Positions 15,001 through 54,614 of a DNA stretch of 64,000 bases are shown here, in pieces. The stretch spans positions 9,114,001 to 9,178,000 of the forward strand of contig OZ059900.1 of NCBI GenBank assembly GCA_964057225.1, written 5' to 3'. This stretch comes from Auanema rhodensis (lineage: Eukaryota > Animalia > Nematoda). The notes under the pieces are model-generated. The model saw only the letters and a list, made by a program, of their open reading frames with translations, was not told the DNA's origin and searched no databases. Made by a program: the position numbers and the translations under genes. Every line of letters starts with the position of its first letter. The stretch's first letter is position 1.

Positions 15001-18000
15001 AATATGGAATTGTCTATAGTTTTTACTTTTACTTGTGATTCTCTATAGATATTTCCTTCTCTCTGATCATCTTCAGTATTTAATTGTATTGTTTCGAAAC
15101 TTTTTATTTTTGTTGGAATTTCAATCGATATCATGTTTTCCCTATACATGTTGTTTTGAAAATCAATATGGAATTGTCTATAGTTTTTACTTTTACTTGT
15201 GATTCTCTATAGATATTTCCTTCTCTCTGATCATCTTCAGTATTTAATTGTATTGTTTCGAAACTTTTTATTTTTGTTGGAATTTCAATCGATATCATGT
15301 TTTCCCTATACATGTTGTTTTGAAAATCAATATGGAATTATCAATAGTTTTTACTTTCACTTGTGATTCTATATAGATATTTCCTTCTCTCTGATCATCT
15401 TCAGTATTTAATTGTATTGTTTCGAAACTTTTTATTTTTGTTGGAATTTCAATCGATATCATGTTTTCCCTGTACATGTTGTTTTGAAAATCAATATGGA
15501 ATTGTCTATAGTTTTTACTTTTACTTGTGATTCTATATAGATATTTCCTTCTCTCTGATCATCTTCAGTATTTAATTGTATTGTTTCGAAACTTTTTATT
15601 TTTGTTGGAATTTCAATCGATATCATGTTTTCCCTATACATGTTGTTTTGAAAATCAATATGGAATTATCAATAGTTTTTACTTTTACTTGTGATTCTCT
15701 ATAGATATTTGCTTCTCTCTGATCATCTTCAGTATTTAATTGTATTGTTTCGAAACTTTTTATTTTTGTTGGAATTTCAATCGATATCATGTTTTCCCTA
15801 TACATGTTGTTTTGAAAATCAATATGGAATTGTCTATAGTTTTTACTTTTACTTGTGATTCTATATAGATATTTCCTTCTCTCTGATCATCTTCAGTATT
15901 TAATTGTATTGTTTCGAAACTTTTTATTTTTGTTGGAATTTCAATCGATATCATGTTTTCCCTATACATGTTGTTTTGAAAATCAATATGGAATTATCAA
16001 TAGTTTTTACTTTTACTTGTGATTCTCTATAGATATTTGCTTCTCTCTGATCATCTTCAGTATTTAATTGTATTGTTTCGAAACTTTTTATTTTTGTTGG
16101 AATTTCAATCGATATCATGTTTTCCCTATACATGTTGTTTTGAAAATCAATATGGAATTATCAATAGTTTTTACTTTCACTTGTGATTCTATATAGATAT
16201 TTCCTTCTCTCTGATCATCTTCAGTATTTAATTGTATTGTTTCGAAACTTTTTATTTTTGTTGGAATTTCAATCGATATCATGTTTTCCCTATACATGTT
16301 GTTTTGAAAATCAATATGGAATTATCAATAGTTTTTACTTTTACTTGTGATTCTCTATAGATATTTGCTTCTCTCTGATCATCTTCAGTATTTAATTGTA
16401 TTGTTTCGAAACTTTTTATTTTTGTTGGAATTTCAATCGATATCATGTTTTCCCTATACATGTTGTTTTGAAAATCAATATGGAATTATCAATAGTTTTT
16501 ACTTTTACTTGTGATTCTCTATAGATATTTGCTTCTCTCTGATCATCTTCAGTATTTAATTGTATTGTTTCGAAACTTTTTATTTTTGTTGGAATTTCAA
16601 TCGATATCATGTTTTCCCTATACATGTTGTTTTGAAAATCAATATGGAATTATCAATAGTTTTTACTTTTACTTGTGATTCTCTATAGATATTTGCTTCT
16701 CTCTGATCATCTTCAGTATTTAATTGTATTGTTTCGAAACTTTTTATTTTTGTTGGAATTTCAATCGATATCATGTTTTCCCTATACATGTTGTTTTGAA
16801 AATCAATATGGAATTATCAATAGTTTTTACTTTTACTTGTGATTCTCTATAGATATTTGCTTCTCTCTGATCATCTTCAGTATTTAATTGTATTGTTTCG
16901 AAACTTTTTATTTTTGTTGGAATTTCAATCGATATCATGTTTTCCCTATACATGTTGTTTTGAAAATCAATATGGAATTGTCTATAGTTTTTACTTTTAC
17001 TTGTGATTCTATATAGATATTTCCTTCTCTCTGATCATCTTCAGTATTTAATTGTATTGTTTCGAAACTTTTTATTTTTGTTGGAATTTCAATCGATATC
17101 ATGTTTTCCCTATACATGTTGTTTTGAAAATCAATATGGAATTATCAATAGTTTTTACTTTCACTTGTGATTCAATATAGATATTTCCTTCTCTCTGATC
17201 ATCTTCAGTATTTAATTGTATTGTTTCGAAACTTTTTATTTTTGTTGGAATTTCAATCGATATCATGTTTTCCCTATACATGTTGTTTTGAAAATCAATA
17301 TGGAATTGTCTATAGTTTTTACTTTTACTTGTGATTCTATATAGATATTTCCTTCTCTCTGATCATCTTCAGTATTTAATTGTATTGTTTCGAAACTTTT
17401 TATTTTTGTTGGAATTTCAATCGATATCATGTTTTCCCTATACATGTTGTTTTGAAAATCAATATGGAATTATCAATAGTTTTTACTTTTACTTGTGATT
17501 CTCTATAGATATTTGCTTCTCTCTGATCATCTTCAGTATTTAATTGTATTGTTTCGAAACTTTTTATTTTTGTTGGAATTTCAATCGATATCATGTTTTC
17601 CCTATACATGTTGTTTTGAAAATCAATATGGAATTGTCTATAGTTTTTACTTTTACTTGTGATTCTATATAGATATTTCCTTCTCTCTGATCATCTTCAG
17701 TATTTAATTGTATTGTTTCGAAACTTTTTATTTTTGTTGGAATTTCAATCGATATCATGTTTTCCCTATACATGTTGTTTTGAAAATCAATATGGAATTA
17801 TCAATAGTTTTTACTTTTACTTGTGATTCTCTATAGATATTTGCTTCTCTCTGATCATCTTCAGTATTTAATTGTATTGTTTCGAAACTTTTTATTTTTG
17901 TTGGAATTTCAATCGATATCATGTTTTCCCTATACATGTTGTTTTGAAAATCAATATGGAATTATCAATAGTTTTTACTTTCACTTGTGATTCTATATAG

Positions 18001-21000
18001 ATATTTCCTTCTCTCTGATCATCTTCAGTATTTAATTGTATTGTTTCGAAACTTTTTATTTTTGTTGGAATTTCAATCGATATCATGTTTTCCCTATACA
18101 TGTTGTTTTGAAAATCAATATGGAATTGTCTATAGTTTTTACTTTTACTTGTGATTCTATATAGATATTTCCTTCTCTCTGATCATCTTCAGTATTTAAT
18201 TGTATTGTTTCGAAACTTTTTATTTTTGTTGGAATTTCAATCGATATCATGTTTTCCCTATACATGTTGTTTTGAAAATCAATATGGAATTATCAATAGT
18301 TTTTACTTTCACTTGTGATTCTATATAGATATTTCCTTCTCTCTGATCATCTTCAGTATTTAATTGTATTGTTTCGAAACTTTTTATTTTTGTTGGAATT
18401 TCAATCGATATCATGTTTTCCCTATACATGTTGTTTTGAAAATCAATATGGAATTGTCTATAGTTTTTACTTTTACTTGTGATTCTATATAGATATTTCC
18501 TTCTCTCTGATCATCTTCAGTATTTAATTGTATTGTTTCGAAACTTTTTATTTTTGTTGGAATTTCAATCGATATCATGTTTTCCCTATACATGTTGTTT
18601 TGAAAATCAATATGGAATTGTCTATAGTTTTTACTTTCACTTGTGATTCTATATAGATATTTCCTTCTCTCTGATCATCTTCAGTATTTAATTGTATTGT
18701 TTCGAAACTTTTTATTTTTGTTGGAATTTCAATCGATATCATGTTTTCCCTATACATGTTGTTTTGAAAATCAATATGGAATTATCAATAGTTTTTACTT
18801 TCACTTGTGATTCTATATAGATATTTCCTTCTCTCTGATCATCTTCAGTATTTAATTGTATTGTTTCGAAACTTTTTATTTTTGTTGGAATTTCAATCGA
18901 TATCATGTTTTCCCTATACATGTTGTTTTGAAAATCAATATGGAATTGTCTATAGTTTTTACTTTTACTTGTGATTCTATATAGATATTTCCTTCTCTCT
19001 GATCATCTTCAGTATTTAATTGTATTGTTTCGAAACTTTTTATTTTTGTTGGAATTTCAATCGATATCATGTTTTCCCTATACATGTTGTTTTGAAAATC
19101 AATATGGAATTATCAATAGTTTTTACTTTCACTTGTGATTCTATATAGATATTTCCTTCTCTCTGATCATCTTCAGTATTTAATTGTATTGTTTCGAAAC
19201 TTTTTATTTTTGTTGGAATTTCAATCGATATCATGTTTTCCCTATACATGTTGTTTTGAAAATCAATATGGAATTGTCTATAGTTTTTACTTTTACTTGT
19301 GATTCTATATAGATATTTCCTTCTCTCTGATCATCTTCAGTATTTAATTGTATTGTTTCGAAACTTTTTATTTTTGTTGGAATTTCAATCGATATCATGT
19401 TTTCCCTATACATGTTGTTTTGAAAATCAATATGGAATTATCAATAGTTTTTACTTTTACTTGTGATTCTCTATAGATATTTGCTTCTCTCTGATCATCT
19501 TCAGTATTTAATTGTATTGTTTCGAAACTTTTTATTTTTGTTGGAATTTCAATCGATATCATGTTTTCCCTATACATGTTGTTTTGAAAATCAATATGGA
19601 ATTGTCTATAGTTTTTACTTTTACTTGTGATTCTATATAGATATTTCCTTCTCTCTGATCATCTTCAGTATTTAATTGTATTGTTTCGAAACTTTTTATT
19701 TTTGTTGGAATTTCAATCGATATCATGTTTTCCCTATACATGTTGTTTTGAAAATCAATATGGAATTGTCTATAGTTTTTACTTTTACTTGTGATTCTAT
19801 ATAGATATTTCCTTCTCTCTGATCATCTTCAGTATTTAATTGTATTGTTTCGAAACTTTTTATTTTTGTTGGAATTTCAATCGATATCATGTTTTCCCTA
19901 TACATGTTGTTTTGAAAATCAATATGGAATTGTCTATAGTTTTTACTTTTACTTGTGATTCTATATAGATATTTCCTTCTCTCTGATCATCTTCAGTATT
20001 TAATTGTATTGTTTCGAAACTTTTTATTTTTGTTGGAATTTCAATCGATATCATGTTTTCCCTATACATGTTGTTTTGAAAATCAATATGGAATTATCAA
20101 TAGTTTTTACTTTCACTTGTGATTCTATATAGATATTTCCTTCTCTCTGATCATCTTCAGTATTTAATTGTATTGTTTCGAAACTTTTTATTTTTGTTGG
20201 AATTTCAATCGATATCATGTTTTCCCTATACATGTTGTTTTGAAAATCAATATGGAATTATCAATAGTTTTTACTTTCACTTGTGATTCTATATAGATAT
20301 TTCCTTCTCTCTGATCATCTTCAGTATTTAATTGTATTGTTTCGAAACTTTTTATTTTTGTTGGAATTTCAATCGATATCATGTTTTCCCTATACATGTT
20401 GTTTTGAAAATCAATATGGAATTATCAATAGTTTTTACTTTCACTTGTGATTCTATATAGATATTTCCTTCTCTCTGATCATCTTCAGTATTTAATTGTA
20501 TTGTTTCGAAACTTTTTATTTTTGTTGGAATTTCAATCGATATCATGTTTTCCCTATACATGTTGTTTTGAAAATCAATATGGAATTATCAATAGTTTTT
20601 ACTTTCACTTGTGATTCTATATAGATATTTCCTTCTCTCTGATCATCTTCAGTATTTAATTGTATTGTTTCGAAACTTTTTATTTTTGTTGGAATTTCAA
20701 TCGATATCATGTTTTCCCTATACATGTTGTTTTGAAAATCAATATGGAATTATCAATAGTTTTTACTTTCACTTGTGATTCTATATAGATATTTCCTTCT
20801 CTCTGATCATCTTCAGTATTTAATTGTATTGTTTCGAAACTTTTTATTTTTGTTGGAATTTCAATCGATATCATGTTTTCCCTATACATGTTGTTTTGAA
20901 AATCAATATGGAATTGTCTATAGTTTTTACTTTTACTTGTGATTCTATATAGATATTTCCTTCTCTCTGATCATCTTCAGTATTTAATTGTATTGTTTCG

Positions 21001-24000
21001 AAACTTTTTATTTTTGTTGGAATTTCAATCGATATCATGTTTTCCCTATACATGTTGTTTTGAAAATCAATATGGAATTATCAATAGTTTTTACTTTTAC
21101 TTGTGATTCTCTATAGATATTTGCTTCTCTCTGATCATCTTCAGTATTTAATTGTATTGTTTCGAAACTTTTTATTTTTGTTGGAATTTCAATCGATATC
21201 ATGTTTTCCCTATACATGTTGTTTTGAAAATCAATATGGAATTGTCTATAGTTTTTACTTTTACTTGTGATTCTATATAGATATTTCCTTCTCTCTGATC
21301 ATCTTCAGTATTTAATTGTATTGTTTCGAAACTTTTTATTTTTGTTGGAATTTCAATCGATATCATGTTTTCCCTATACATGTTGTTTTGAAAATCAATA
21401 TGGAATTATCAATAGTTTTTACTTTTACTTGTGATTCTCTATAGATATTTCCTTCTCTCTGATCATCTTCAGTATTTAATTGTATTGTTTCGAAACTTTT
21501 TATTTTTGTTGGAATTTCAATCGATATCATATTTTCCCTATACCTGTTGTTTTGAAAATCAATATGGAATTATCAATAGTTTTTACTTTTACTTGTGATT
21601 CTCTATAGATATTCGCTTCTCTCTGATCATCTTCAGTATTTAATTGTTTTGTTTCGAAACTTTTTATTTTTGTTGGAATTTCAATCGATATCATGTTTTC
21701 CCTATACATGTTGTTTTGAAAATCAATATGGAATTATCAATAGTTTTTACTTTTACTTGTGATTCTCTATAGATATTCGCTTCTCTCTGATCATCTTCAG
21801 TATTTAATTGTATTGTTTCGAAACTTTTTATTTTTGTTGGAATTTCAATCGATATCATGTTTTCCCTATACATGTTGTTTTGAAAATCAATATGGAATTA
21901 TCAATAGTTTTTACTTTTACTTGTGATTCTATATAGATATTCGCTTCTCTCTGATCATCTTCAGTATTTAATTGTATTGTTTCGAAACTTTTTATTTTTG
22001 TTGGAATTTCAATCGATATCATGTTTTCCCTATACATGTTGTTTTGAAAATCAATATGGAATTATCAATAGTTTTTACTTTTACTTGTGATTCTCTATAG
22101 ATATTCGCTTCTCTCTGATCATCTTCAGTATTTAATTGTATTGTTTCGAAACTTTTTATTTTTGTTGGAATTTCAATCGATATCATGTTTTCCCTATACA
22201 TGTTGTTTTGAAAATCAATATGGAATTATCAATAGTTTTTACTTTTACTTGTGATTCTCTATAGATATTCGCTTCTCTCTGATCATCTTCAGTATTTAAT
22301 TGTATTGTTTCGAAACTTTTTATTTTTGTTGGAATTTCAATCGATATCATGTTTTCCCTATACATGTTGTTTTGAAAATCAATATGGAATTATCAATAGT
22401 TTTTACTTTTACTTGTGATTCTATATAGATATTTCCTTCTCTTTAATCATCTTAAGTATTGAATTGTATTGTTTCGAAACTTTTTATTTTTGTTGGAATT
22501 TCAATCGATATCATGTTTTCCCTATACATGTTGTTTTGAAAATCAATATGGAATTATCAATAGTTTTTACTTTTACTTGTGATTCTCTATAGATATTTGC
22601 TTCTCTCTGATCATCTTCAGTATTTAATTGTATTGTTTCGAAAATTTTAATTTTTGTTGGAATTTCAATCGATATCATCTTTTACCTATACATGTTGTTT
22701 TGAAAATCAATATGGAATTATCAATAGTTTTTACTTTTACTTGTGATTCTCTATAGATATTTGCTTCTCTCTGATCATCTTCAGTATTTAATTGTATTGT
22801 TTCGAAACTTTTTATTTTTGTTGGAATTTCAATCGATATCATGTTTTCCCTATACATGTTGTTTTGAAAATCAATATGGAATTGTCTATAGTTTTTACTT
22901 TTACTTGTGATTCTATATAGATATTTCCTTCTCTCTGATCATCTTCAGTATTTAATTGTATTGTTTCGAAAATTTTTATTTTTGTTGGAATTTCAATCGA
23001 TATCATGGTTTCCCTATACATGTTGTTTTGAAAATCAATATGGAATTGTCTATAGTTTTTACTTTTACTTGTGATTCTATATAGATATTTCCTTCTCTCT
23101 GATCATCTTCAGTATTTAATTGTATTGTTTCGAAAATTTTTATTTTTGTTGGAATTTCAATCGATATCATCTTTTACCTATACATGTTGTTTTGAAAATC
23201 AATATGGAATTGTCTATAGTTTTTACTTTTACTTGTGATTCTATATAGATATTTCCTTCTCTCTGATCATCTTCAGTATTTAATTGTATTGTTTCGAAAA
23301 TTTTTATTTTTGTTGGAATTTCAATCGATATCATGTTTTCCCTATACATGTTGTTTTGAAAATCAATATGGAATTGTCTATAGTTTTTACTTTTACTTGT
23401 GATTCTATATAGATATTTCCTTCTCTCTGATCATCTTCAGTATTTAATTGTATTGTTTCGAAAATTTTTATTTTTGTTGGAATTTCAATCGATATCATCT
23501 TTTACCTATACATGTTGTTTTGAAAATCAATATGGAATTGTCTATAGTTTTTACTTTTACTTGTGATTCTATATAGATATTTCCTTCTCTCTGATCATCT
23601 TCAGTATTTAATTGTATTGTTTCGAAACTTTTTATTTTTGTTGGAATTTCAATCGATATCATGTTTTCCCTATACATGTTGTTTTGAAAATCAATATGGA
23701 ATTGTCTATAGTTTTTACTTTTACTTGTGATTCTATATAGATATTTCCTTCTCTCTGATCATCTTCAGTATTTAATTGTATTGTTTCGAAACTTTTTATT
23801 TTTGTTGGAATTTCAATCGATATCATCTTTTACCTATACATGTTGTTTTGAAAATCAATATGGAATTATCAATAGTTTTTACTTTTACTTGTGATTCTCT
23901 ATAGATATTTGCTTCTCTCTGATCATCTTCAGTATTTAATTGTATTGTTTCGAAACTTTTTATTTTTGTTGGAATTTCAATCGATATCATGTTTTCCCTA

Positions 24001-24944
24001 TACATGTTGTTTTGAAAATCAATATGGAATTATCAATAGTTTTTACTTTTACTTGTGATTCTATATAGATATTTCCTTCTCTTTAATCATCTTAAGTATT
24101 GAATTGTATTGTTTCGAAACTTTTTATTTTTGTTGGAATTTCAATCGATATCATCTTTTACCTATACATGTTGTTTTGAAAATCAATATGGAATTATCAA
24201 TAGTTTTTACTTTTACTTGTGATTCTCTATAGATATTTGCTTCTCTCTGATCATCTTCAGTATTTAATTGTATTGTTTCGAAAATTTTAATTTTTGTTGG
24301 AATTTCAATCGATATCATGTTTCCCCTATACATGTTGTTTTGAAAATCAATATGGAATTATCAATAGTTTTTACTTTTACTTGTGATTCTATATAGATAT
24401 TTCCTTCTCTTTAATCATCTTGAGTATTGAATTGTATTGTTTCGAAAATTTTAATTTTTGTTGGAATTTCAATCGATATCATGTTTTCCCTATACATGTT
24501 GTTTTGAAAATCAATATGGAATTATCAATAGTTTTTACTTTTACTTGTGATTCTCTATAGATATTTGCTTCTCTCTGATCATCTTCAGTATTTAATTGTA
24601 TTGTTTCGAAACTTTTTATTTTTGTTGGAATTTCAATTGATATCATGTTTTCCCTATACATGTTGTTTTGAAAATCAATATGGAATTATCAATAGTTTTT
24701 ACTTTTACTTGTGATTCTCTATAGATATTTGCTTCTCTCTGATCATCTTCAGTATTTAATTGTATTGTTTCGAAACTTTTTATTTTTGTTGGAATTTCAA
24801 TCGATATCATGTTTTCCCTATACATGTTGTTTTGAAAATCAATATGGAATTATCAATAGTTTTTACTTTTACTTGTGATTATCTATAGATATTTCCTTCT
24901 CTCTGATCATCTTCATTATTGAATTGAATTGTTCTGAAACTTTT
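1..24944 (-). repeat. 164-bp tandem satellite, array 1 (~152 units, T-rich on +; runs off the left edge)
   Basis: The TTGTTT(C/T)GAA register recurs at 1, 821, 14761 and 24601, all exact multiples of 164 apart. ORF-track hits are spaced 164 bp apart. The array is the reverse complement of arrays 2 and 3. Confidence 0.99.
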
Positions 24945-25084
24945 CTGTTTGTTATGCTGGAAAAATAAGAAAAAATAAATAAAACTCTATTGTTAGTTGT
25001 TAAAATTTTTTTTGAATACCATAGTCAATATGTGTGTGAAATGGTACTTTTTTTATTACATGGTTCATATTTTATCTATATATA

Positions 25085-25776
25085 CAGTCATGTGCGATGA
25101 AAGTCGGACACCCACTAGAAACCCTTATATCTGACAAGACAAACTACAAAAATTCAGAAAAAAAATATTTTGAATGTTAAAAAACGATAATGGATTCAGA
25201 AAAAATCTTTAAAGTTTTAAAAATCATGTTTTAAAGTCTTTTCTGAAGTCTTCGAAATTTTCATAAACTGCTTGAAGTCTTCTTTCTTGAATTTCAGAAG
25301 TTTCATTAAGATTTCAGAAATAATTTTTTGATAGAATGTTAAGAGTACACTAAACGTCTATTTTTCTTTTGAACAGGAGAATTTTTTTGTACGTCAACCA
25401 AGTTCTCTTCATAGATATTCAGTAAGATTCAGATGCTGAAGCTTACTTGTTTGAAGCTATGCCATAGGAAAAACTTAGTTATTGATTGAGCTTTCTGCTC
25501 AGAATGATTTAAAGATATTTCTAATGAAGTAACTTCTTCCTAATCTCAAATTTTGTTATATTAAGATGAATTATTCAAAATAGTCAAAAAACACTAAATT
25601 TCCTTATAAATTTAGAAAATAATATTGAAATCAGTATATCAACATATATTTTGACTAAATATAAACTATATGAACTCGCAAAATTTTTGAAATTAAAAAA
25701 AATTTTTTTTTGTAGTTTGAGGGGGTTTTCTGGGGCTTCTAACATAGGGGTGTCCGATTTTCATCGCACATGACTG
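25085..25776 (-). mobile_element. Internally deleted, non-autonomous Tc1/mariner-family element (692 bp), left-arm copy
   Basis: 29-bp TIRs CAGTCATGTGCGATGAAA(G/A)TCGGACACCC with TA flanking both ends (25083-84, 25777-78). It contains a degenerate Tc1 transposase C-terminal remnant (see the mirror copy). Confidence 0.9.
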
Positions 25777-26528
25777 TACATGTATATATGTATAATGATA
25801 TTCTGATTGTAAGATTCTATAACTGAAAACTGAAGAATTGAGAAATTCGGTGATGGTCGATGTAGTTTTGTAAAAAAGTATCGGTTCCATCAAAAACATT
25901 GAGGGAGATCGTTAAGAGTTATTGTGAAGTTATAGAATCTTAGCAAAAATAAACTTGAAAAGTCATTTGAACTCATCGCAAAAACACAACCACAACACAG
26001 ATAAATGAAAAACAATTGGGATCAAACTCTGAAAAGAAAAAAACAAATATTACAATAATTACGGAATATCATATGTATTTGATTTATGTTTTTAAATTTA
26101 AAAAGACTAAATGGAACTATACTATCGTGAGAAGACGTGTCTAAATATTTTTTGTTCAACTTCTTTGGCCGTTGGGGAAGAATAAACGTTCTTATCGAAT
26201 TAACCTTCGATATGTGTTCTGTGTGAGGCCAGCCAAATCGTTTAAGCAGAAATATTAATTATACCCTAATATTCAAGACCCTATTATTCTAATTTTGGAT
26301 TCTCACTATCTATTAGTGAGGAAAATAAAAAGAATCTGATTCAGATAAGAGTTCATTCCAACATGAATTTCGACATTCTATTAGGATCCCCGATGGTTCT
26401 AATCCGCGGGAAGTCCAGATAGACTAAAAGAGAAATAGTGTACGTAACACAAGGCATATTAATAGTTTATCATATATGTAGTATGAATTATCTTATTATA
26501 TATTTTATATTTTATAGTTAATTCATAT

Positions 26529-26600
26529 AACATCTTAGTATAATGGTTGTATTTCAGTTATAGTAAGGTGCACTCGTAGGTTCAAATCCTACAGTGATAT
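26529..26600 (+). pseudogene. tRNA-derived sequence (Pol III A/B boxes; tRNA pseudogene or SINE head)
   Basis: A-box-like TAGTATAATGG at 26536. Perfect T-arm GTAGG-TTCAAAT-CCTAC at 26576-26592 at tRNA spacing. The acceptor stem does not pair well. Confidence 0.6.
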
Positions 26601-26611
26601 CAAAGAAAATA

Positions 26612-26705
26612 TAAAATATCTCTCTCTCTCTAAAATATAAATCTCTCTCTCTAAAATATAAATCTCTCTCTCTAATATATAAATCTCTCTCTAATATACA
26701 TCTCT
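26612..26705 (+). repeat. ~21-bp minisatellite AAAATATAAA(TC)nT, ~5 decaying copies
   Basis: Read directly from the sequence. It sits immediately 3' of the tRNA-like sequence, like a SINE tail. Confidence 0.9.
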
Positions 26706-26857
26706 GTAATCTGACAATGTAGTTGAAGCTGCACTAATCATAATCATAAAGAAAATCTGAAATTCAAATTAATCTCAACTGTAATGTTTTGAAAAAGTTT
26801 TTAATTTCAAATACTCTTGTCGCTCTTCTTATTTGCGATTAAAACATTAATATTATA

Positions 26858-26933
26858 AGCCAAATGGTCAAGTGGTCTGTATGGTTAACGTGAACAAGCA
26901 ACTGCAAAGGTACGATTCCTTTCTGCGTTTTTT
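26858..26933 (+). pseudogene. Second tRNA-like cassette with T6 terminator
   Basis: A-box-like TGGTCAAGTGG at 26865. T-arm AAAGG-TACGATT-CCTTT at 26906-26922. TTTTTT at 26928-26933. Confidence 0.5.
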
Positions 26934-27537
26934 ATGGAAATCAATACCAAATCTAAAATCCAAAAAACGCTCCGATAGATTTCGACCTTGAAAAAGCCAT
27001 TTTTTTGAAATTCAAAAACTAATAACTCTGTTTCAAGTTAATTTTTTCGAAATTTTATTATATTATCTTGTAGCTCAGCAATAGGCCCCTCTTTTCACAA
27101 AAATTCAAAGCTGTATCTCACCTCACTCAGTAGTTATTCTTCTTCAAAACAAACACAAATATTCAAAAACTTGACTTTAAAGGCCGTTATCTCCTTACTC
27201 CTTCAAGTTATCAAAAATTTCTAAACGGATTCTAAACCTACTCAAAAATATCTATCAGATGAACTACTTATATGGATGTTTGAAGCACTTTGAATTTTTG
27301 AAAATACAAGAATTTAGCCATTTTCCAGTTTGATAAATAAAAAATTTGCATTTTCTTTGTTTTGAGTGATGCATCTGAAGCGCATTGAAACGCTGATTCC
27401 AAATATCAAAACCTTAACTTCCAATTTTCACTCTGAAAAGAGTTATGAGGCTTTAAACGTTTTGACGTCAAACATTCAGAAGACTATATCTCCTTTCAGA
27501 CAGCGTTTCAGAGACTCTTAAGTATCAGAATCGTTTT

Positions 27538-28037
27538 CTACTCTATTGATTTCCTTATGTAATCAATTTCAGAACGTTTCCTCAAAATTTACAAATTTCG
27601 ATCAAATCGTTCGATTCCATGTACTCCCCCCTTACCTACTTTTCGACCAAAACTGGCCATCACTCAAAAAATATTTTCAGATTAAATCGATAATTATATG
27701 ATATAATTAGAATCAAAATGATGTTTAAGAGAAAGAATAACATGAATACTCATCTTCAAACTCTTTCATCAGTTGTATCATGGTAACTGATACAACTGAG
27801 GAACTCAAGAGTTTAAAGATGAAGATGTTCATGTTATTCTATCTCTTAAACTTCAGTTTCAATCTAATTATATCATATAATTATCGATTTAAACTGAAAA
27901 AATCTTTTGAGTGATGGCCAGTTTTGGTCGAAAAGTAGGTAAGGGGGGAGTACATGGAATCAGACAATTTGATCGAAATTTGAAAATTTTGAGGAAACGC
28001 TTTGAAACTGATTACATAAGGTTAATCAATGGCGTAA
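27538..28037. repeat. Imperfect palindromic core (foldback/MITE-like hairpin, 7-nt loop)
   Basis: TCAGTTGTATCA-TGGTAAC-TGATACAACTGA at 27769-27799. Manual alignment gives ~22 substitutions plus 7 bp of indels over ~245 bp per arm. Confidence 0.93.
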
Positions 28038-28585
28038 AAAACGATTCTGATACTTAAGAGTCTCTGAAACGCTGTCTGAAAGGAGATATAGTCTTCTGAA
28101 TGTTTGACGTCAAAACGTTTAAAGCCTCATAACTCTTTTCAGAGTGAAAATTGGAAGTTAAGGTTTTCATATTTGGAATCAGCGTTTCAATGCGCTTCAG
28201 ATGCATCACTCAAAACAAAGAAAATGCAAATTTTTTATTTATCAAACTGGAAAATGGCTAAATTCTTGTATTTTCAAAAATTCAAAGTGCTTCAAACATC
28301 CATATAAGTAGTTCATCTGATAGATATTTTTGAGTAGGTTTAGAATCCGTTTAGAAATTTTTGATAACTTGAAGGAGTAAGGAGATAACGGCCTTTAAAG
28401 TCAAGTTTTTGAATATTTGTGTTTGTTTTGAAGAAGAATAACTACTGAGTGAGGTGAGATACAGCTTTGAATTTTTGTGAAAAGAGGGGCCTATTGCTGA
28501 GCTACAAGATAATATAATAAAATTTCGAAAAAATTAACTTGAAACAGAGTTATTAGTTTTTGAATTTCAAAAAAATGGCTTTTTC
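28038..28585 (+). mobile_element. Probable DNA-transposon-derived sequence with recurring GAGWTA..TTTRAA motifs (mirror copy at ~26990-27537)
   Basis: Related motifs GGAGATATAG (28082), GGAGATAACGGCCTTTAAA (28381), GAGATACAGCTTTGAA (28456) and GAGTTATTAGTTTTTGAA (28547). They resemble the subterminal repeats of nematode palindromic DNA elements. Termini not defined. Confidence 0.35.
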
Positions 28586-28641
28586 AAGGTCGAAATCTAT
28601 CGGAGCGTTTTTTGGATTTTAGATTTGGTATTGATTTCCAT

Positions 28642-28717
28642 AAAAAACGCAGAAAGGAATCGTACCTTTGCAGTTGCTTGTTCACGTTAACCATACAGAC
28701 CACTTGACCATTTGGCT
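28642..28717 (-). pseudogene. Mirror copy of the second tRNA-like cassette
   Basis: Reverse complement of 26858-26933. Confidence 0.5.
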
Positions 28718-28869
28718 TATAATATTAATGTTTTAATCGCAAATAAGAAGAGCGACAAGAGTATTTGAAATTAAAAACTTTTTCAAAACATTACAGTTGA
28801 GATTAATTTGAATTTCAGATTTTCTTTATGATTATGATTAGTGCAGCTTCAACTACATTGTCAGATTAC

Positions 28870-28963
28870 AGAGATGTATATTAGAGAGAGATTTATATAT
28901 TAGAGAGAGAGATTTATATTTTAGAGAGAGAGATTTATATTTTAGAGAGAGAGAGATATTTTA
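28870..28963 (-). repeat. Mirror copy of the 21-bp minisatellite
   Basis: Reverse complement of 26612-26705. Confidence 0.9.
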
Positions 28964-28974
28964 TATTTTCTTTG

Positions 28975-29046
28975 ATATCACTGTAGGATTTGAACCTACG
29001 AGTGCACCTTACTATAACTGAAATACAACCATTATACTAAGATGTT
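28975..29046 (-). pseudogene. Mirror copy of the first tRNA-derived sequence
   Basis: Reverse complement of 26529-26600. Confidence 0.6.
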
Positions 29047-29798
29047 ATATGAATTAACTATAAAATATAAAATATATAATAAGATAATTCATACTACATA
29101 TATGATAAACTATTAATATGCCTTGTGTTACGTACACTATTTCTCTTTTAGTCTATCTGGACTTCCCGCGGATTAGAACCATCGGGGATCCTAATAGAAT
29201 GTCGAAATTCATGTTGGAATGAACTCTTATCTGAATCAGATTCTTTTTATTTTCCTCACTAATAGATAGTGAGAATCCAAAATTAGAATAATAGGGTCTT
29301 GAATATTAGGGTATAATTAATATTTCTGCTTAAACGATTTGGCTGGCCTCACACAGAACACATATCGAAGGTTAATTCGATAAGAACGTTTATTCTTCCC
29401 CAACGGCCAAAGAAGTTGAACAAAAAATATTTAGACACGTCTTCTCACGATAGTATAGTTCCATTTAGTCTTTTTAAATTTAAAAACATAAATCAAATAC
29501 ATATGATATTCCGTAATTATTGTAATATTTGTTTTTTTCTTTTCAGAGTTTGATCCCAATTGTTTTTCATTTATCTGTGTTGTGGTTGTGTTTTTGCGAT
29601 GAGTTCAAATGACTTTTCAAGTTTATTTTTGCTAAGATTCTATAACTTCACAATAACTCTTAACGATCTCCCTCAATGTTTTTGATGGAACCGATACTTT
29701 TTTACAAAACTACATCGACCATCACCGAATTTCTCAATTCTTCAGTTTTCAGTTATAGAATCTTACAATCAGAATATCATTATACATATATACATGTA

Positions 29799-30490
29799 CA
29801 GTCATGTGCGATGAAAATCGGACACCCCTATGTTAGAAGCCCCAGAAAACCCCCTCAAACTACAAAAAAAAATTTTTTTTAATTTCAAAAATTTTGCGAG
29901 TTCATATAGTTTATATTTAGTCAAAATATATGTTGATATACTGATTTCAATATTATTTTCTAAATTTATAAGGAAATTTAGTGTTTTTTGACTATTTTGA
30001 ATAATTCATCTTAATATAACAAAATTTGAGATTAGGAAGAAGTTACTTCATTAGAAATATCTTTAAATCATTCTGAGCAGAAAGTTCAATCAATAACTAA
30101 GTTTTTCCTATGGCATAGCTTCAAACAAGTAAGCTTCAGCATCTGAATCTTACTGAATATCTATGAAGAGAACTTGGTTGACGTACAAAAAAATTCTCCT
30201 GTTCAAAAGAAAAATAGACGTTTAGTGTACTCTTAACATTCTATCAAAAAATTATTTCTGAAATCTTAATGAAACTTCTGAAATTCAAGAAAGAAGACTT
30301 CAAGCAGTTTATGAAAATTTCGAAGACTTCAGAAAAGACTTTAAAACATGATTTTTAAAACTTTAAAGATTTTTTCTGAATCCATTATCGTTTTTTAACA
30401 TTCAAAATATTTTTTTTCTGAATTTTTGTAGTTTGTCTTGTCAGATATAAGGGTTTCTAGTGGGTGTCCGACTTTCATCGCACATGACTG
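29799..30490 (+). mobile_element. Internally deleted Tc1/mariner-family element, right-arm copy
   Basis: TA|CAGTCATGTGCGATG...CATCGCACATGACTG|TA. From 30140 it reads HLNLTEYL*RELG*R (cf. Tc1 DLNPIEHLWEELERR), and from 30292 RRLQAVYEN (cf. Tc1 RRCQAVIDA). Confidence 0.9.
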
Positions 30491-30630
30491 TATATATAGA
30501 TAAAATATGAACCATGTAATAAAAAAAGTACCATTTCACACACATATTGACTATGGTATTCAAAAAAAATTTTAACAACTAACAATAGAGTTTTATTTAT
30601 TTTTTCTTATTTTTCCAGCATAACAAACAG

Positions 30631-33600
30631 AAAAGTTTCAGAACAATTCAATTCAATAATGAAGATGATCAGAGAGAAGGAAATATCTATAGATAATCAC
30701 AAGTAAAAGTAAAAACTATTGATAATTCCATATTGATTTTCAAAACAACATGTATAGGGAAAACATGATATCGATTGAAATTCCAACAAAAATAAAAAGT
30801 TTCGAAACAATACAATTAAATACTGAAGATGATCAGAGAGAAGGAAATATCTATAGAGAATCACAAGTAAAAGTAAAAACTATTGATAATTCCATATTGA
30901 TTTTCAAAACAACAGGTATAGGGAAAATATGATATCAATTGAAATTTCAAGAGAAATAAAAATTTTCGAAACAATTCAATTAAATACTGAAGATGATCAG
31001 AGAGAAAGAAATATCTATAGAGAATCACAAGTAAAAGTAAAAACTATTGATAATTCCATATTGATTTTCAAAACAACAGGTATAGGGAAAATATGATATC
31101 AATTGAAATTTCAAGAGAAATAAAAATTTTCGAAACAATTCAATTAAATACTGAAGATGATCAGAGAGAAGGAAATATCTATAGAGAATCACAAGTAAAA
31201 GTAAAAACTATTGATAATTCCATATTGATTTTCAAAACAACAGGTATAGGGAAAATATGATATCGATTGAAATTCCAACAAAAATAAAAAGTTTCGAAAC
31301 AATACAATTAAATACTGAAGATGATCAGAGAGAAGGAAATATCTATAGAGAATCACAAGTAAAAGTAAAAACTATTGATAATTCCATATTGATTTTCAAA
31401 ACAACAGGTATAGGGAAAATATGATATCGATTGAAATTTCAAGAGAAATAAAAAGTTTCGAAACAATACAATTAAATACTGAAGATGATCAGAGAGAAGG
31501 AAATATCTATAGAGAATCACAAGTAAAAGTAAAAACTATTGATAATTCCATATTGATTTTCAAAACAACAGGTATAGGGAAAATATGATATCGATTGAAA
31601 TTCCAACAAAAATAAAAAGTTTCGAAACAATACAATTAAATACTGAAGATGATCAGAGAGAAGGAAATATCTATAGAGAATCACAAGTAAAAGTAAAAAC
31701 TATTGATAATTCCATATTGATTTTCAAAACAACAGGTATAGGGAAAATATGATATCGATTGAAATTTCAAGAGAAATAAAAAGTTTCGAAACAATACAAT
31801 TAAATACTGAAGATGATCAGAGAGAAGGAAATATCTATAGAGAATCACAAGTAAAAGTAAAAACTATTGATAATTCCATATTGATTTTCAAAACAACAGG
31901 TATAGGGAAAATATGATATCGATTGAAATTCCAACAAAAATAAAAAGTTTCGAAACAATACAATTAAATACTGAAGATGATCAGAGAGAAGGAAATATCT
32001 ATAGAGAATCACAAGTAAAAGTAAAAACTATTGATAATTCCATATTGATTTTCAAAACAACAGGTATAGGGAAAATATGATATCGATTGAAATTTCAAGA
32101 GAAATAAAAAGTTTCGAAACAATACAATTAAATACTGAAGATGATCAGAGAGAAGGAAATATCTATAGAGAATCACAAGTAAAAGTAAAAACTATTGATA
32201 ATTCCATATTGATTTTCAAAACAACAGGTATAGGGAAAATATGATATCGATTGAAATTCCAACAAAAATAAAAAGTTTCGAAACAATACAATTAAATACT
32301 GAAGATGATCAGAGAGAAGGAAATATCTATAGAGAATCACAAGTAAAAGTAAAAACTATTGATAATTCCATATTGATTTTCAAAACAACAGGTATAGGGA
32401 AAATATGATATCGATTGAAATTTCAAGAGAAATAAAAAGTTTCGAAACAATACAATTAAATACTGAAGATGATCAGAGAGAAGGAAATATCTATAGAGAA
32501 TCACAAGTAAAAGTAAAAACTATTGATAATTCCATATTGATTTTCAAAACAACAGGTATAGGGAAAATATGATATCGATTGAAATTCCAACAAAAATAAA
32601 AAGTTTCGAAACAATACAATTAAATACTGAAGATGATCAGAGAGAAGGAAATATCTATAGAGAATCACAAGTAAAAGTAAAAACTATTGATAATTCCATA
32701 TTGATTTTCAAAACAACAGGTATAGGGAAAATATGATATCGATTGAAATTTCAAGAGAAATAAAAAGTTTCGAAACAATACAATTAAATACTGAAGATGA
32801 TCAGAGAGAAGGAAATATCTATAGAGAATCACAAGTAAAAGTAAAAACTATTGATAATTCCATATTGATTTTCAAAACAACAGGTATAGGGAAAATATGA
32901 TATCGATTGAAATTCCAACAAAAATAAAAAGTTTCGAAACAATACAATTAAATACTGAAGATGATCAGAGAGAAGGAAATATCTATAGAGAATCACAAGT
33001 AAAAGTAAAAACTATTGATAATTCCATATTGATTTTCAAAACAACAGGTATAGGGAAAATATGATATCGATTGAAATTTCAAGAGAAATAAAAAGTTTCG
33101 AAACAATACAATTAAATACTGAAGATGATCAGAGAGAAGGAAATATCTATAGAGAATCACAAGTAAAAGTAAAAACTATTGATAATTCCATATTGATTTT
33201 CAAAACAACAGGTATAGGGAAAATATGATATCGATTGAAATTTCAAGAGAAATAAAAAGTTTCGAAACAATACAATTAAATACTGAAGATGATCAGAGAG
33301 AAGGAAATATCTATAGAGAATCACAAGTAAAAGTAAAAACTATTGATAATTCCATATTGATTTTCAAAACAACAGGTATAGGGAAAATATGATATCGATT
33401 GAAATTTCAAGAGAAATAAAAAGTTTCGAAACAATACAATTAAATACTGAAGATGATCAGAGAGAAGGAAATATCTATAGAGAATCACAAGTAAAAGTAA
33501 AAACTATTGATAATTCCATATTGATTTTCAAAACAACAGGTATAGGGAAAATATGATATCGATTGAAATTCCAACAAAAATAAAAAGTTTCGAAACAATA

Positions 33601-36600
33601 CAATTAAATACTGAAGATGATCAGAGAGAAGGAAATATCTATAGAGAATCACAAGTAAAAGTAAAAACTATTGATAATTCCATATTGATTTTCAAAACAA
33701 CAGGTATAGGGAAAATATGATATCGATTGAAATTTCAAGAGAAATAAAAAGTTTCGAAACAATACAATTAAATACTGAAGATGATCAGAGAGAAGGAAAT
33801 ATCTATAGAGAATCACAAGTAAAAGTAAAAACTATTGATAATTCCATATTGATTTTCAAAACAACAGGTATAGGGAAAATATGATATCGATTGAAATTCC
33901 AACAAAAATAAAAAGTTTCGAAACAATACAATTAAATACTGAAGATGATCAGAGAGAAGGAAATATCTATAGAGAATCACAAGTAAAAGTAAAAACTATT
34001 GATAATTCCATATTGATTTTCAAAACAACAGGTATAGGGAAAATATGATATCGATTGAAATTTCAAGAGAAATAAAAAGTTTCGAAACAATACAATTAAA
34101 TACTGAAGATGATCAGAGAGAAGGAAATATCTATAGAGAATCACAAGTAAAAGTAAAAACTATTGATAATTCCATATTGATTTTCAAAACAACAGGTATA
34201 GGGAAAATATGATATCGATTGAAATTCCAACAAAAATAAAAAGTTTCGAAACAATACAATTAAATACTGAAGATGATCAGAGAGAAGGAAATATCTATAG
34301 AGAATCACAAGTAAAAGTAAAAACTATTGATAATTCCATATTGATTTTCAAAACAACAGGTATAGGGAAAATATGATATCGATTGAAATTCCAACAAAAA
34401 TAAAAAGTTTCGAAACAATACAATTAAATACTGAAGATGATCAGAGAGAAGGAAATATCTATAGAGAATCACAAGTAAAAGTAAAAACTATTGATAATTC
34501 CATATTGATTTTCAAAACAACAGGTATAGGGAAAATATGATATCGATTGAAATTCCAACAAAAATAAAAAGTTTCGAAACAATACAATTAAATACTGAAG
34601 ATGATCAGAGAGAAGGAAATATCTATAGAGAATCACAAGTAAAAGTAAAAACTATTGATAATTCCATATTGATTTTCAAAACAACAGGTATAGGGAAAAT
34701 ATGATATCGATTGAAATTTCAAGAGAAATAAAAAGTTTCGAAACAATACAATTAAATACTGAAGATGATCAGAGAGAAGGAAATATCTATAGAGAATCAC
34801 AAGTAAAAGTAAAAACTATTGATAATTCCATATTGATTTTCAAAACAACAGGTATAGGGAAAATATGATATCGATTGAAATTCCAACAAAAATAAAAAGT
34901 TTCGAAACAATACAATTAAATACTGAAGATGATCAGAGAGAAGGAAATATCTATAGAGAATCACAAGTAAAAGTAAAAACTATTGATAATTCCATATTGA
35001 TTTTCAAAACAACAGGTATAGGGAAAATATGATATCGATTGAAATTCCAACAAAAATAAAAAGTTTCGAAACAATACAATTAAATACTGAAGATGATCAG
35101 AGAGAAGCAAATATCTATAGATAATCACAAGTAAAAGTAAAAACTATTGATAATTCCATATTGATTTTCAAAACAACATGTATAGGAAAAATATGATATC
35201 GATTGAAATTCCAACAAAAATGAAAATTTTCGAAACAATACAATTAAATACTGAAGATGATCAGAGAGAAGGAAATATCTATGGAGAATCACAAGTAAAA
35301 GTAAAAACTATTGATAATTCCATATTGATTTTCAAAACAACAGGTATAGGGAAAATATGATATCGATTGAAATTTCAAGAGAAATAAAAAGTTTCGAAAC
35401 AATACAATTAAATACTGAAGATGATCAGAGAGAAGGAAATATCTATAGAGAATCACAAGTAAAAGTAAAAACTATTGATAATTCCATATTGATTTTCAAA
35501 ACAACAGGTATAGGGAAAATATGATATCGATTGAAATTTCAAGAGAAATAAAAAGTTTCGAAACAATACAATTAAATACTGAAGATGATCAGAGAGAAGG
35601 AAATATCTATAGAGAATCACAAGTAAAAGTAAAAACTATTGATAATTCCATATTGATTTTCAAAACAACAGGTATAGGGAAAATATGATATCGATTGAAA
35701 TTTCAAGAGAAATAAAAAGTTTCGAAACAATACAATTAAATACTGAAGATGATCAGAGAGAAGGAAATATCTATAGAGAATCACAAGTAAAAGTAAAAAC
35801 TATTGATAATTCCATATTGATTTTCAAAACAACAGGTATAGGGAAAATATGATATCGATTGAAATTTCAAGAGAAATAAAAAGTTTCGAAACATTACAAT
35901 TAAATACTGAAGATGATCAGAGAGAAGGAAATATCTATAGAGAATCACAAGTAAAAGTAAAAACTATTGATAATTCCATATTGATTTTCAAAACAACAGG
36001 TATAGGGAAAATATGATATCGATTGAAATTCCAACAAAAATAAAAAGTTTCGAAACAATACAATTAAATACTGAAGATGATCAGAGAGAAGGAAATATCT
36101 ATAGAGAATCACAAGTAAAAGTAAAAACTATTGATAATTCCATATTGATTTTCAAAACAACAGGTATAGGGAAAATATGATATCGATTGAAATTTCAAGA
36201 GAAATAAAAAGTTTCGAAACAATACAATTAAATACTGAAGATGATCAGAGAGAAGGAAATATCTATAGAGAATCACAAGTAAAAGTAAAAACTATTGATA
36301 ATTCCATATTGATTTTCAAAACAACAGGTATAGGGAAAATATGATATCGATTGAAATTTCAAGAGAAATAAAAAGTTTCGAAACAATACAATTAAATACT
36401 GAAGATGATCAGAGAGAAGGAAATATCTATAGAGAATCACAAGTAAAAGTAAAAACTATTGATAATTCCATATTGATTTTCAAAACAACAGGTATAGGGA
36501 AAATATGATATCAATTGAAATTTCAAGAGAAATAAAAATTTTCGAAACAATTCAATTAAATACTGAAGATGATCAGAGAGAAGGAAATATCTATAGAGAA

Positions 36601-39600
36601 TCACAAGTAAAAGTAAAAACTATTGATAATTCCATATTGATTTTCAAAACAACAGGTATAGGGAAAATATGATATCGATTGAAATTTCAAGAGAAATAAA
36701 AAGTTTCGAAACAATACAATTAAATACTGAAGATGATCAGAGAGAAGGAAATATCTATAGAGAATCACAAGTAAAAGTAAAAACTATTGATAATTCCATA
36801 TTGATTTTCAAAACAACAGGTATAGGGAAAATATGATATCGATTGAAATTTCAAGAGAAATAAAAAGTTTCGAAACAATACAATTAAATACTGAAGATGA
36901 TCAGAGAGAAGGAAATATCTATAGAGAATCACAAGTAAAAGTAAAAACTATTGATAATTCCATATTGATTTTCAAAACAACAGGTATAGGGAAAATATGA
37001 TATCGATTGAAATTTCAAGAGAAATAAAAAGTTTCGAAACAATACAATTAAATACTGAAGATGATCAGAGAGAAGGAAATATCTATAGAGAATCACAAGT
37101 AAAAGTAAAAACTATTGATAATTCCATATTGATTTTCAAAACAACAGGTATAGGGAAAATATGATATCGATTGAAATTTCAAGAGAAATAAAAAGTTTCG
37201 AAACAATACAATTAAATACTGAAGATGATCAGAGAGAAGGAAATATCTATAGAGAATCACAAGTAAAAGTAAAAACTATTGATAATTCCATATTGATTTT
37301 CAAAACAACAGGTATAGGGAAAATATGATATCAATTGAAATTTCAAGAGAAATAAAAATTTTCGAAACAATTCAATTAAATACTGAAGATGATCAGAGAG
37401 AAGGAAATATCTATAGAGAATCACAAGTAAAAGTAAAAACTATTGATAATTCCATATTGATTTTCAAAACAACATGTATAGGGGAAACATGATATCGATT
37501 GAAATTCCAACAAAAATTAAAATTTTCGAAACAATACAATTAAATACTGAAGATGATCAGAGAGAAGGAAATATCTATAGAGAATCACAAGTAAAAGTAA
37601 AAACTATTGATAATTCCATATTGATTTTCAAAACAACAGGTATAGGGAAAACATGATATCGATTGAAATTCCAAGAGAAATAAAAAGTTTCGAAACAATA
37701 CAATTAAATACTGAAGATGATCAGAGAGAAGCAAATATCTATAGATAATCACAAGTAAAAGTAAAAACTATTGATAATTCCATATTGATTTTCAAAACAA
37801 CATGTATAGGGAAAATATGATATCGATTGAAATTCCAACAAAAATAAAAAGTTTCGAAACAATACAATTAAATACTGAAGATGATCAGAGAGAAGGAAAT
37901 ATCTATAGAGAATCACAAGTAAAAGTAAAAACTATTGATAATTCCATATTGATTTTCAAAACAACAGGTATAGGGAAAATATGATATCGATTGAAATTCC
38001 AACAAAAATAAAAAGTTTCGAAACAATACAATTAAATACTGAAGATGATCAGAGAGAAGGAAATATCTATAGAGAATCACAAGTAAAAGTAAAAACTATT
38101 GATAATTCCATATTGATTTTCAAAACAACAGGTATAGGGAAAATATGATATCGATTGAAATTCCAACAAAAATAAAAAGTTTCGAAACAATACAATTAAA
38201 TACTGAAGATGATCAGAGAGAAGCAAATATCTATAGATAATCACAAGTAAAAGTAAAAACTATTGATAATTCCATATTGATTTTCAAAACAACAGGTATA
38301 GGGAAAATATGATATCGATTGAAATTCCAACAAAAATAAAAAGTTTCGAAACAATACAATTAAATACTGAAGATGATCAGAGAGAAGGAAATATCTATAG
38401 AGAATCACAAGTAAAAGTAAAAACTATTGATAATTCCATATTGATTTTCAAAACAACATGTATAGGAAAAATATGATATCGATTGAAATTCCAACAAAAA
38501 TGAAAATTTTCGAAACAATACAATTAAATACTGAAGATGATCAGAGAGAAGGAAATATCTATAGAGAATCACAAGTAAAAGTAAAAACTATTGATAATTC
38601 CATATTGATTTTCAAAACAACAGGTATAGGGAAAATATGATATCGATTGAAATTTCAAGAGAAATAAAAAGTTTCGAAACAATACAATTAAATACTGAAG
38701 ATGATCAGAGAGAAGGAAATATCTATAGAGAATCACAAGTAAAAGTAAAAACTATTGATAATTCCATATTGATTTTCAAAACAACAGGTATAGGGAAAAT
38801 ATGATATCGATTGAAATTCCAACAAAAATAAAAAGTTTCGAAACAATACAATTAAATACTGAAGATGATCAGAGAGAAGGAAATATCTATAGAGAATCAC
38901 AAGTAAAAGTAAAAACTATTGATAATTCCATATTGATTTTCAAAACAACAGGTATAGGGAAAATATGATATCGATTGAAATTTCAAGAGAAATAAAAAGT
39001 TTCGAAACAATACAATTAAATACTGAAGATGATCAGAGAGAAGGAAATATCTATAGAGAATCACAAGTAAAAGTAAAAACTATTGATAATTCCATATTGA
39101 TTTTCAAAACAACAGGTATAGGGAAAATATGATATCGATTGAAATTCCAACAAAAATAAAAAGTTTCGAAACAATACAATTAAATACTGAAGATGATCAG
39201 AGAGAAGGAAATATCTATAGAGAATCACAAGTAAAAGTAAAAACTATTGATAATTCCATATTGATTTTCAAAACAACAGGTATAGGGAAAATATGATATC
39301 GATTGAAATTTCAAGAGAAATAAAAAGTTTCGAAACAATACAGTTAAATACTGAAGATGATCAGAGAGAAGGAAATATCTATAGAGAATCACAAGTAAAA
39401 GTAAAAACTATTGATAATTCCATATTGATTTTCAAAACAACAGGTATAGGGAAAATATGATATCGATTGAAATTTCAAGAGAAATAAAAAGTTTCGAAAC
39501 AATACAATTAAATACTGAAGATGATCAGAGAGAAGGAAATATCTATAGAGAATCACAAGTAAAAGTAAAAACTATTGATAATTCCATATTGATTTTCAAA

Positions 39601-52106: not shown

Positions 52107-52152
52107 AAATATATCTTATTCAAAGTTATTTTCAAGTCTTTGGTCGACTTAC

Positions 52153-53070: not shown

Positions 53071-53199
53071 ACAGATTAACAACTATCTCTTTATCCCTCA
53101 GTTCACTCAATTTGTGATACCTTCACCCTGGCAATTTCTCTTTCTCTATGTGTGACCTTCTCTTCTCTTCCTCACTCTGACCGAGCACAGTCATATATT

Positions 53200-54580: not shown

Positions 54581-54614
54581 AAATCAGAAGAGAGCTGGTA
54601 AATTTTATTTAAAA

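What the first reader, a model, noticed from the sequence alone, without database searches (positions are those of the whole stretch)
24732..30843. Satellite field flips orientation across a giant palindrome with young arms and an old, imperfect core
Seen: the arms are ~99.9% identical over ~2.8 kb, then identity drops abruptly at 27538/28037 to ~88% for the inner ~245 bp, closing on a 7-nt loop. Flanking satellites diverge from the centre in exact mirror register. Known: short inverted repeats next to a DNA break prime fold-back synthesis that makes large palindromes (Tetrahymena rDNA, yeast and mammalian amplicons). Inference: an old hairpin element seeded a fold-back inverted duplication, and the sharp identity step marks the priming point. 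Alternatively, arm-to-arm gene conversion is ongoing but excluded from the tip. Either would make the hairpin an organiser of bidirectional satellite arrays.
Basis: partly seen in the sequence, partly recalled or inferred. Interest (0 to 1): 0.85.

Follow-up and report, generated by a model that had tools for sequence, protein, structure and literature searches.

The report
Re-copied palindrome in worm satellite DNA
A repeat field in a roundworm genome reverses direction at a real mirror-image segment whose arms were recently copied onto each other while its 500-letter tip stayed old; this is a clean example of a known kind of DNA repair scar, with no sign of a function.

Summary
The core observation holds. 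The arms (24732-27537 / 28038-30843) differ at 2 of 2,806 bases. Identity then steps down to 88% over a 243/250-nt core closing on a 7-nt loop. The 'exact mirror register' is uninformative: it follows from indel-free 164-bp units, and variant order is not mirrored (p=0.48).

New here: the satellite is layered symmetrically (old | young | unique arm | core | unique arm | young | gene island | old). Divergence across the centre is about 9% (core), 6-9% (outer arrays), 1-4% (inner arrays) and 0.07% (unique arms). So the strand flip is older than the near-identical arms.

Best reading (~0.5): an old fold-back palindrome whose arms were re-copied outward from a priming point, probably more than once, sparing the tip. 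Rival (~0.3): one recent template switch at a palindromic MITE-like element.

There is no DNA-elimination motif. The host is probably Auanema rhodense. The scan noted similar palindromes elsewhere in this genome. Known kind; modest interest.

The parts
1..14958 (-). Outer-left 164-bp satellite block ('Ld', old subfamily; runs off the window). Strand is given relative to the right-hand arrays.
14959..24953 (-). Inner-left 164-bp satellite block ('Lp', 60 units plus a degenerate junction unit), same young subfamily as the inner-right block; in-register, abrupt join to the old block at 14958/14959
24732..27537 (+). Left near-perfect arm (about 220 bp satellite plus 2.58 kb non-satellite DNA)
25085..25776 (.). 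TA-flanked element with about 29-bp terminal inverted repeats starting CAGT (Tc1/mariner-type MITE by resemblance), carried in both arms (mirror copy 29799-30490)
26255..26323 (+). Weak SmY-like relic (Sm-site-like run plus 3' hairpin), below the Rfam threshold; mirror copy 29252-29320
26534..26594 (+). Degenerate tRNA-like sequence (A/B-box-like motifs, T-arm hairpin), below the Rfam threshold
27538..27780 (+). Left half of the old imperfect core
27781..27787 (.). 7-nt loop at the centre
27788..28037 (-). Right half of the core, 88% complementary to the left half
28038..30843 (-). Right near-perfect arm
30622..52113 (+). Inner-right 164-bp satellite block ('R', 130 units), young subfamily; unit at 51769-51932 is identical to the outermost inner-left unit at 14959-15122
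52114..54599 (.). Non-satellite gene island with no mirror counterpart on the left; satellite phase runs on across it, as expected for an insertion
54600..61437 (+). Outer-right 164-bp satellite block ('T', old subfamily, nearest to Ld)

Best explanation
An old fold-back event made a large palindrome with a 7-nt loop and reversed the 164-bp satellite. The 500-bp core is the surviving tip of that event. Later, breaks or stalled forks in one arm were repaired from the other arm: a 3' end near the centre paired with the opposite arm, was extended outward, and rejoined the far side through satellite homology. One such event about 1% divergence ago put the young satellite subfamily on both sides (left copy ending in register at about 14958). 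The latest, about 0.07% ago, started at 27538/28037 and homogenised the unique arms. Copying runs outward from its priming point, so the tip is never overwritten, and products with a perfected tip would be unstable and tend to be lost. It is a neutral repair scar. SHOWN: anatomy, step, layer divergences, subfamily relationships. INFERRED: order of events, the priming mechanism, more than one copying event, loss of perfected tips. The direction of copying is not resolved.
For: Four nested divergence levels: core 9.5% substitutions; outer arrays Ld-T nearest-neighbour 6.1%, mean 8.8%; inner arrays Lp-R nearest-neighbour 1.2%, mean 4.1%; unique arms 0.07%. Lp and R lie on one side of a supported branch (98/94; 20 of 22 Lp and all 39 R haplotypes) apart from Ld and T (bootstrap not fully converged, units recombine). 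Near-fixed differences: Lp-R 1, Ld-T 2, Lp-Ld 10, Ld-R 8. The only shared haplotype is the outermost unit of each young block (L59 = R128). Short patches cross sides out of mirror position (147G/151C/17T at L2-3 and R40-41; 138G/151T at L19). The junction unit keeps old-type letters at its edge and young-type letters beyond. Precedent: nematode inverted repeats kept alike within species (PMC1803023); multi-kb arm-to-arm tracts in human Y palindrome P6 (PMC3723533); shorter spacers and higher identity raise instability (PMC7999016).
Against: Satellite divergence is not a clean clock. A 5- to 17-fold faster satellite mutation rate, or sorting of standing variants, would let one event explain both the inner arrays and the arms. 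The match between core and outer-array divergence may be coincidence, since R and T on the same side are also about 10% apart. Repeated outward copying from random break points predicts a staircase of ages inside the core, but the core is evenly diverged; only one 57-bp perfect run (p about 0.016) hints at a patch. No reads or second strain were examined.
Confidence: 0.5

Rival explanations
1. The core is (part of) a pre-existing palindromic non-autonomous transposon. One recent template switch at it (break-induced fold-back or ODIRA-type fork switch) copied 2.6 kb of unique DNA plus the young array in inverted orientation, and the copy rejoined an array that was already reversed. A second palindrome noted about 20 kb upstream could be the partner junction of an inverted triplication.
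For: A sharp step and an evenly diverged core are what a single priming event predicts. ODIRA junctions retain the original inverted repeats (PMC10766186). L59 = R128 fits one copy spanning the whole young array. Roughly 85% self-palindromes of 330 bp occur in another rhabditid genome and are duplicated as such (L001; there with identical flanks, so not shown to be mobile). Unchecked note s1-422395 places another palindrome upstream.
Against: 58 of 60 inner-left units have no inner-right unit within one difference, against 0.12-0.42 expected differences. It still needs an older, now invisible strand switch. No termini, target-site duplication or second copy of the core were found (all weak negatives). 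Yeast ODIRA interruptions are 40-80 bp, not 500, and yeast fold-backs corrected the mismatches.
Confidence: 0.3
2. Assembly or library artefact: a fold-back chimeric read or collapsed arms produced the identity.
For: Germline-limited repeats have only about 29-fold coverage in the probable source assembly (10.64898/2026.08.27.747507). Palindromic junctions are hard to sequence (PMC10766186).
Against: A fold-back read would mirror the satellite letter for letter, but the two sides carry different haplotypes from 213 bp into the array. The arms hold two differences. The 6.1-kb unit is shorter than typical HiFi reads (own knowledge), and the probable source assembly is HiFi-based.
Confidence: 0.07
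3. The core is kept imperfect because it is a transcribed long hairpin (hairpin-RNA / endo-siRNA source), with the arms homogenised around it.
For: It folds into one long stem (DNA -221 kcal/mol; RNA -313/-324). Transitions favour G-U pairs on the minus strand 8 to 3.
Against: 8 to 3 is not significant, 12 of 23 substitutions are transversions that break pairing on both strands, Rfam matches are chance-level, and any decayed palindrome folds this way. No expression data were obtained.
Confidence: 0.06
4. The centre is a programmed DNA-elimination break signal (SFE), and the palindrome is its repair product.
For: The probable host cuts its genome at 29-bp palindromic motifs.
Against: No GGC-N3-GCC motif, no convincing one-mismatch version and no telomere hexamer anywhere in the window. 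Elimination is somatic and would not be inherited. The motif core is taken from O. tipulae (PMC13060919); the A. rhodense matrix was not available.
Confidence: 0.02

Closest known systems
Arm-to-arm gene-converted palindromes (human Y P6, PMC3723533; Caenorhabditis inverted repeats, PMC1803023)
   Same: Arms above 99.9% identical, multi-kb homogenised tract, abrupt inner boundary, signs that the structure is older than its arm identity.
   Different: The centre is itself a decayed palindrome with a 7-nt loop, not a unique spacer. The arms hold no protein gene, only MITE and ncRNA-like relics. It lies inside a satellite. Antiquity is inferred from satellite layers, not from orthologues.
Fold-back inverted duplication at a break near an imperfect inverted repeat (yeast, PMC10622511)
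   Same: Centre on an imperfect inverted repeat with a short loop, outward copying, resolution through repeat homology.
   Different: Yeast seeds are 3-15 bp and their mismatches were corrected; here 245 bp with 26 differences remain. No terminal deletion is evident, and the flip predates the young arms.
ODIRA / inverted triplication (PMC10766186)
   Same: Interstitial inverted copy with a palindromic junction that keeps the original repeat; chromosome continuity is kept.
   Different: The second junction and third copy are not in the window. The interruption would be about 500 nt rather than 40-80. The inverted block is not a faithful mirror beyond 2.8 kb.
Palindromic non-autonomous transposons of nematodes (C. 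elegans PAL/LONGPAL-type; own knowledge)
   Same: Several hundred bp of imperfect self-complementarity with a tiny loop, AT-rich, non-coding.
   Different: No terminus, target-site duplication or second copy was shown.

Membership tests
Gene-converted palindrome | Long inverted arms of very high identity | tested here: met
   2 differences in 2,806 bp
Gene-converted palindrome | Structure older than its arm identity | tested here: inconclusive
   Outer arrays are opposed and 6-9% apart, inner arrays 1-4% apart, but satellites are a poor clock
Gene-converted palindrome | Arm-shared substitutions relative to an orthologous locus in another strain or species | not testable with these tools
   No orthologous locus was reachable
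Fold-back inverted duplication | Centre on a pre-existing inverted repeat with a short loop, and identity complete from the priming point outward | tested here: met
   7-nt loop and step at 27538/28037
Fold-back inverted duplication | The inverted copy mirrors the donor faithfully up to a second junction | tested here: not met
   Variant order is not mirrored beyond 213 bp of satellite (p=0.48); only subfamily-level mirroring to about 15 kb
ODIRA inverted triplication | Two palindromic junctions and three copies of the segment | not testable with these tools
   The second junction would lie outside the window; only an unchecked note (s1-422395) suggests one
Palindromic MITE (core) | Dispersed multi-copy family | tested here: inconclusive
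   No copy in the window, six loci from other nematodes and runs, metagenomes or the protein collection; the host genome itself could not be searched
Palindromic MITE (core) | Defined termini with target-site duplication | tested here: inconclusive
   None recognisable; one original end would have been overwritten by the arm copy
SFE elimination site | 29-bp palindrome with GGC-N3-GCC centre | tested here: not met
   0 matches in the window
Hairpin-RNA locus | Transcription and small-RNA production | not testable with these tools
Hairpin-RNA locus | Arm differences biased to G-U on one strand | tested here: inconclusive
   8 vs 3, with 12 transversions

The most novel reading that the evidence does not exclude
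An old palindrome acts as a recurring, outward-only copying axis that carries newly arisen satellite subfamilies across a strand switch, while a tip of about 250 bp is held imperfect because perfected tips are destroyed. If the locus is on the poorly recombining X and germline-limited, such palindromes could stand in for allelic recombination in homogenising arrays, and the tip length across many loci would measure the in-vivo stability limit of palindromes.
Probability: 0.2. Interest if true: 0.55.

Novelty: new member of a known kind. Interest (0 to 1): 0.27.

Why it matters
It is a base-resolved record of how a satellite strand switch ages: four nested time layers around one axis. It supports the view that repeat-rich germline DNA in this nematode tolerates structures that are unstable elsewhere, in line with the weak-surveillance argument of the genome paper. 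It shows no function. Its value would come from a genome-wide census of such centres, not from this locus alone.

Tried and rejected

Other copies of the core: none in the window; none by exact 26-mer in metagenome contigs; none among eight window ORFs looked up exactly; none by protein search with a core reading frame (this sees only proteins 0.55-1.75 times the query length); none in six fetched loci. The blank by-sequence findings search means nothing on this genome. None of these searched the host assembly.

Rejected: mirror order of variants, an SFE or telomere seed, a microRNA (Rfam scores 22-28 bits against cut-offs of 75-100), intact tRNA genes, protein coding in arms or core. Cruciform branch-migration conversion was set aside because extrusion starts at the centre (PMC7999016) and should clean the tip first. 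The published X-retained FISH probe does not match the window; the other three probes were not tested.

Full report
Setting. The window is 74% A+T and mostly one 164-bp satellite. Unchecked scan notes name the genome as the nematode Auanema rhodense. My own support is indirect: an exon of the gene island at 54031-54219 finds 39-56% identical proteins of Auanema sp. JU1783 and Caenorhabditis auriculariae. The A. rhodense genome paper describes a HiFi assembly in which about 61% of the germline genome, mostly tandem repeats, is eliminated from somatic cells at 29-bp palindromic motifs (10.64898/2026.08.27.747507). It gives repeat units of 167-504 nt, so this 164-bp family is not clearly one of its listed families. 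Whether this window is eliminated, and whether it is on the X as note s1-422395 says of its neighbourhood, was not tested.

Observation. The palindrome is real at the stated coordinates. The arms 24732-27537 and 28038-30843 differ at two positions and have no indels. The core halves 27538-27780 and 27788-28037 align with 220 matches, 23 substitutions and three gaps (88.0%) around a 7-nt loop. A step 242 nt from the tip fits better than an exponential decline by 4.9 log-likelihood units. A ramp of a few tens of bases is not firmly excluded. Divergence is even along the core. The claim about mirror register needs correcting: every unit on both sides is 164 bp, so register is automatic, and units at mirror positions are no more alike than shuffled ones (p=0.48).

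Contents of the arms. Each arm holds about 220 bp of satellite and 2.58 kb of other DNA: a TA-flanked 692-bp element with terminal inverted repeats (25085-25776), a 133-bp segment with 15-bp inverted ends (25810-25942), weak SmY-like and tRNA-like relics below Rfam thresholds, a 21-bp microrepeat, and no credible protein gene. No part of it recurs elsewhere in the window beyond chance 14- to 17-mers. There is no GGC-N3-GCC elimination motif and no telomere hexamer.

The satellite is layered. Reading outward on the left there are 60 units of a young subfamily (Lp, to 14959), then an abrupt in-register change to an old subfamily (Ld). On the right there are 130 young units (R, to 52113), a 2.5-kb gene island across which the satellite phase continues, and then an old subfamily (T). 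Lp and R fall together on one supported branch apart from Ld and T, except two recombinant Lp haplotypes (rough bootstrap, midpoint drawing, one 205-bp T unit left out). Near-fixed differences are 1 for Lp-R and 2 for Ld-T, against 4-10 for young-old pairs. The only haplotype shared between blocks is the outermost unit of each young block (L59 = R128). The junction unit, identical in both arms, has old-type letters at its edge. Divergence across the centre thus comes in four levels: core 9.5%, outer arrays 6-9%, inner arrays 1-4%, unique arms 0.07%.

What follows. Whichever arm was the donor, the young copy rejoined, in register, an old array that already pointed the other way. The strand flip is therefore older than the near-identical arms (inference). 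Had the inner arrays split when the arms were last copied, a pair of units should differ by 0.12 bases (upper bound 0.42). In fact 58 of 60 left units are two or more differences from any right unit. Singleton rates inside the arrays (0.02-0.04%) are about the age of the arms, leaving little time to replace a whole variant pool unless satellites mutate 5- to 17-fold faster. Short haplotype patches also appear on the opposite side out of mirror position. Two or more copying events are therefore the simpler reading, though one event is not excluded.

Mechanism. I favour an old fold-back palindrome whose tip is the core, later re-copied arm to arm (about 0.5). A 3' end close to the centre pairs with the other arm, is extended outward and rejoins through satellite homology. 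This is fold-back priming and gene conversion in one step, and it keeps the chromosome continuous. Everything inward of the priming point is left alone. Palindromes with short spacers and high identity are the most unstable (PMC7999016), so versions with a cleaned tip would tend to be lost. Nematode inverted repeats kept alike within species (PMC1803023) and multi-kb tracts in Y palindrome P6 (PMC3723533) are precedents. The weak point is the evenly diverged core, which shows no staircase of ages. Against a plain break-induced fold-back, yeast corrected the mismatches of the seed repeat (PMC10622511). Artefact (0.07), hairpin RNA (0.06) and elimination signal (0.02) have little support; about 0.05 is left for histories not considered.

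Limits. The host assembly could not be searched for other copies of the core. Neighbouring spliced genes were searched exon by exon only.

Verdict. A real, well-resolved palindrome of a known kind. The step is confirmed, the mirror-register argument is dropped, the flip is dated earlier than the arms, and the 'organiser' role is unsupported. Unchecked scan notes describe similar anatomies elsewhere in this genome (s1-420664, s1-429783, s1-378811), so it looks like one of a population. Interest 0.27.

Noticed in passing
window 26255-26323 (+), mirror 29252-29320 (-): SmY-like sequence with an Sm-site-like run followed by a 9-bp hairpin; 19.6 bits against a cut-off of 39. Possibly a relic or a diverged nematode Sm RNA, now present in two inverted copies.
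   Followed up: partly
window 26525-26602 and 26855-26930 (+): Two tRNA-like stretches with A- and B-box-like motifs. The first folds well (z -4.9) and gives a weak Rfam tRNA match; the second does not fold well. ARAGORN calls neither.
   Followed up: partly
window 25810-25942: 133-bp segment bounded by perfect 15-bp inverted repeats, next to the larger TA-flanked element; a possible small MITE.
   Followed up: no
window 27432-27500: A decayed 70-bp local palindrome (78%) inside the perfect arm, about 40 bp outside the identity step; a possible stalling or break site, untested.
   Followed up: no
window 27613-27669 / 27905-27961: 57-bp perfect run inside the 88% core (p about 0.016): a local conversion patch or a conserved part of an element.
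   Followed up: partly
window 52114-54599: Gene island inserted in phase between arrays R and T. One exon matches Auanema sp. JU1783 proteins carrying the PaREP1 Pfam family and C. auriculariae proteins. A non-coding stretch at about 53200-53370 is 82-84% conserved in L001 and L002.
   Followed up: partly
window 61900-63900 (-): Spliced gene with Pre-SET (E 1e-5) and weak SET matches in two exons.
   Followed up: partly
window about 24945, 30630, 52110, 54600: Three distinct satellite-to-unique junctions fall in the same A-rich stretch of the 164-bp unit (offsets about 5-20).
   Followed up: no
window 57201-57405: One 205-bp unit in array T carries a 41-bp internal duplication.
   Followed up: no
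L001:2464-2793 and L001:17670-17999: Two 99.4% identical copies of a 330-bp, 85% self-complementary palindrome in C. auriculariae, with identical flanks; unrelated in sequence to the window's core.
   Followed up: partly
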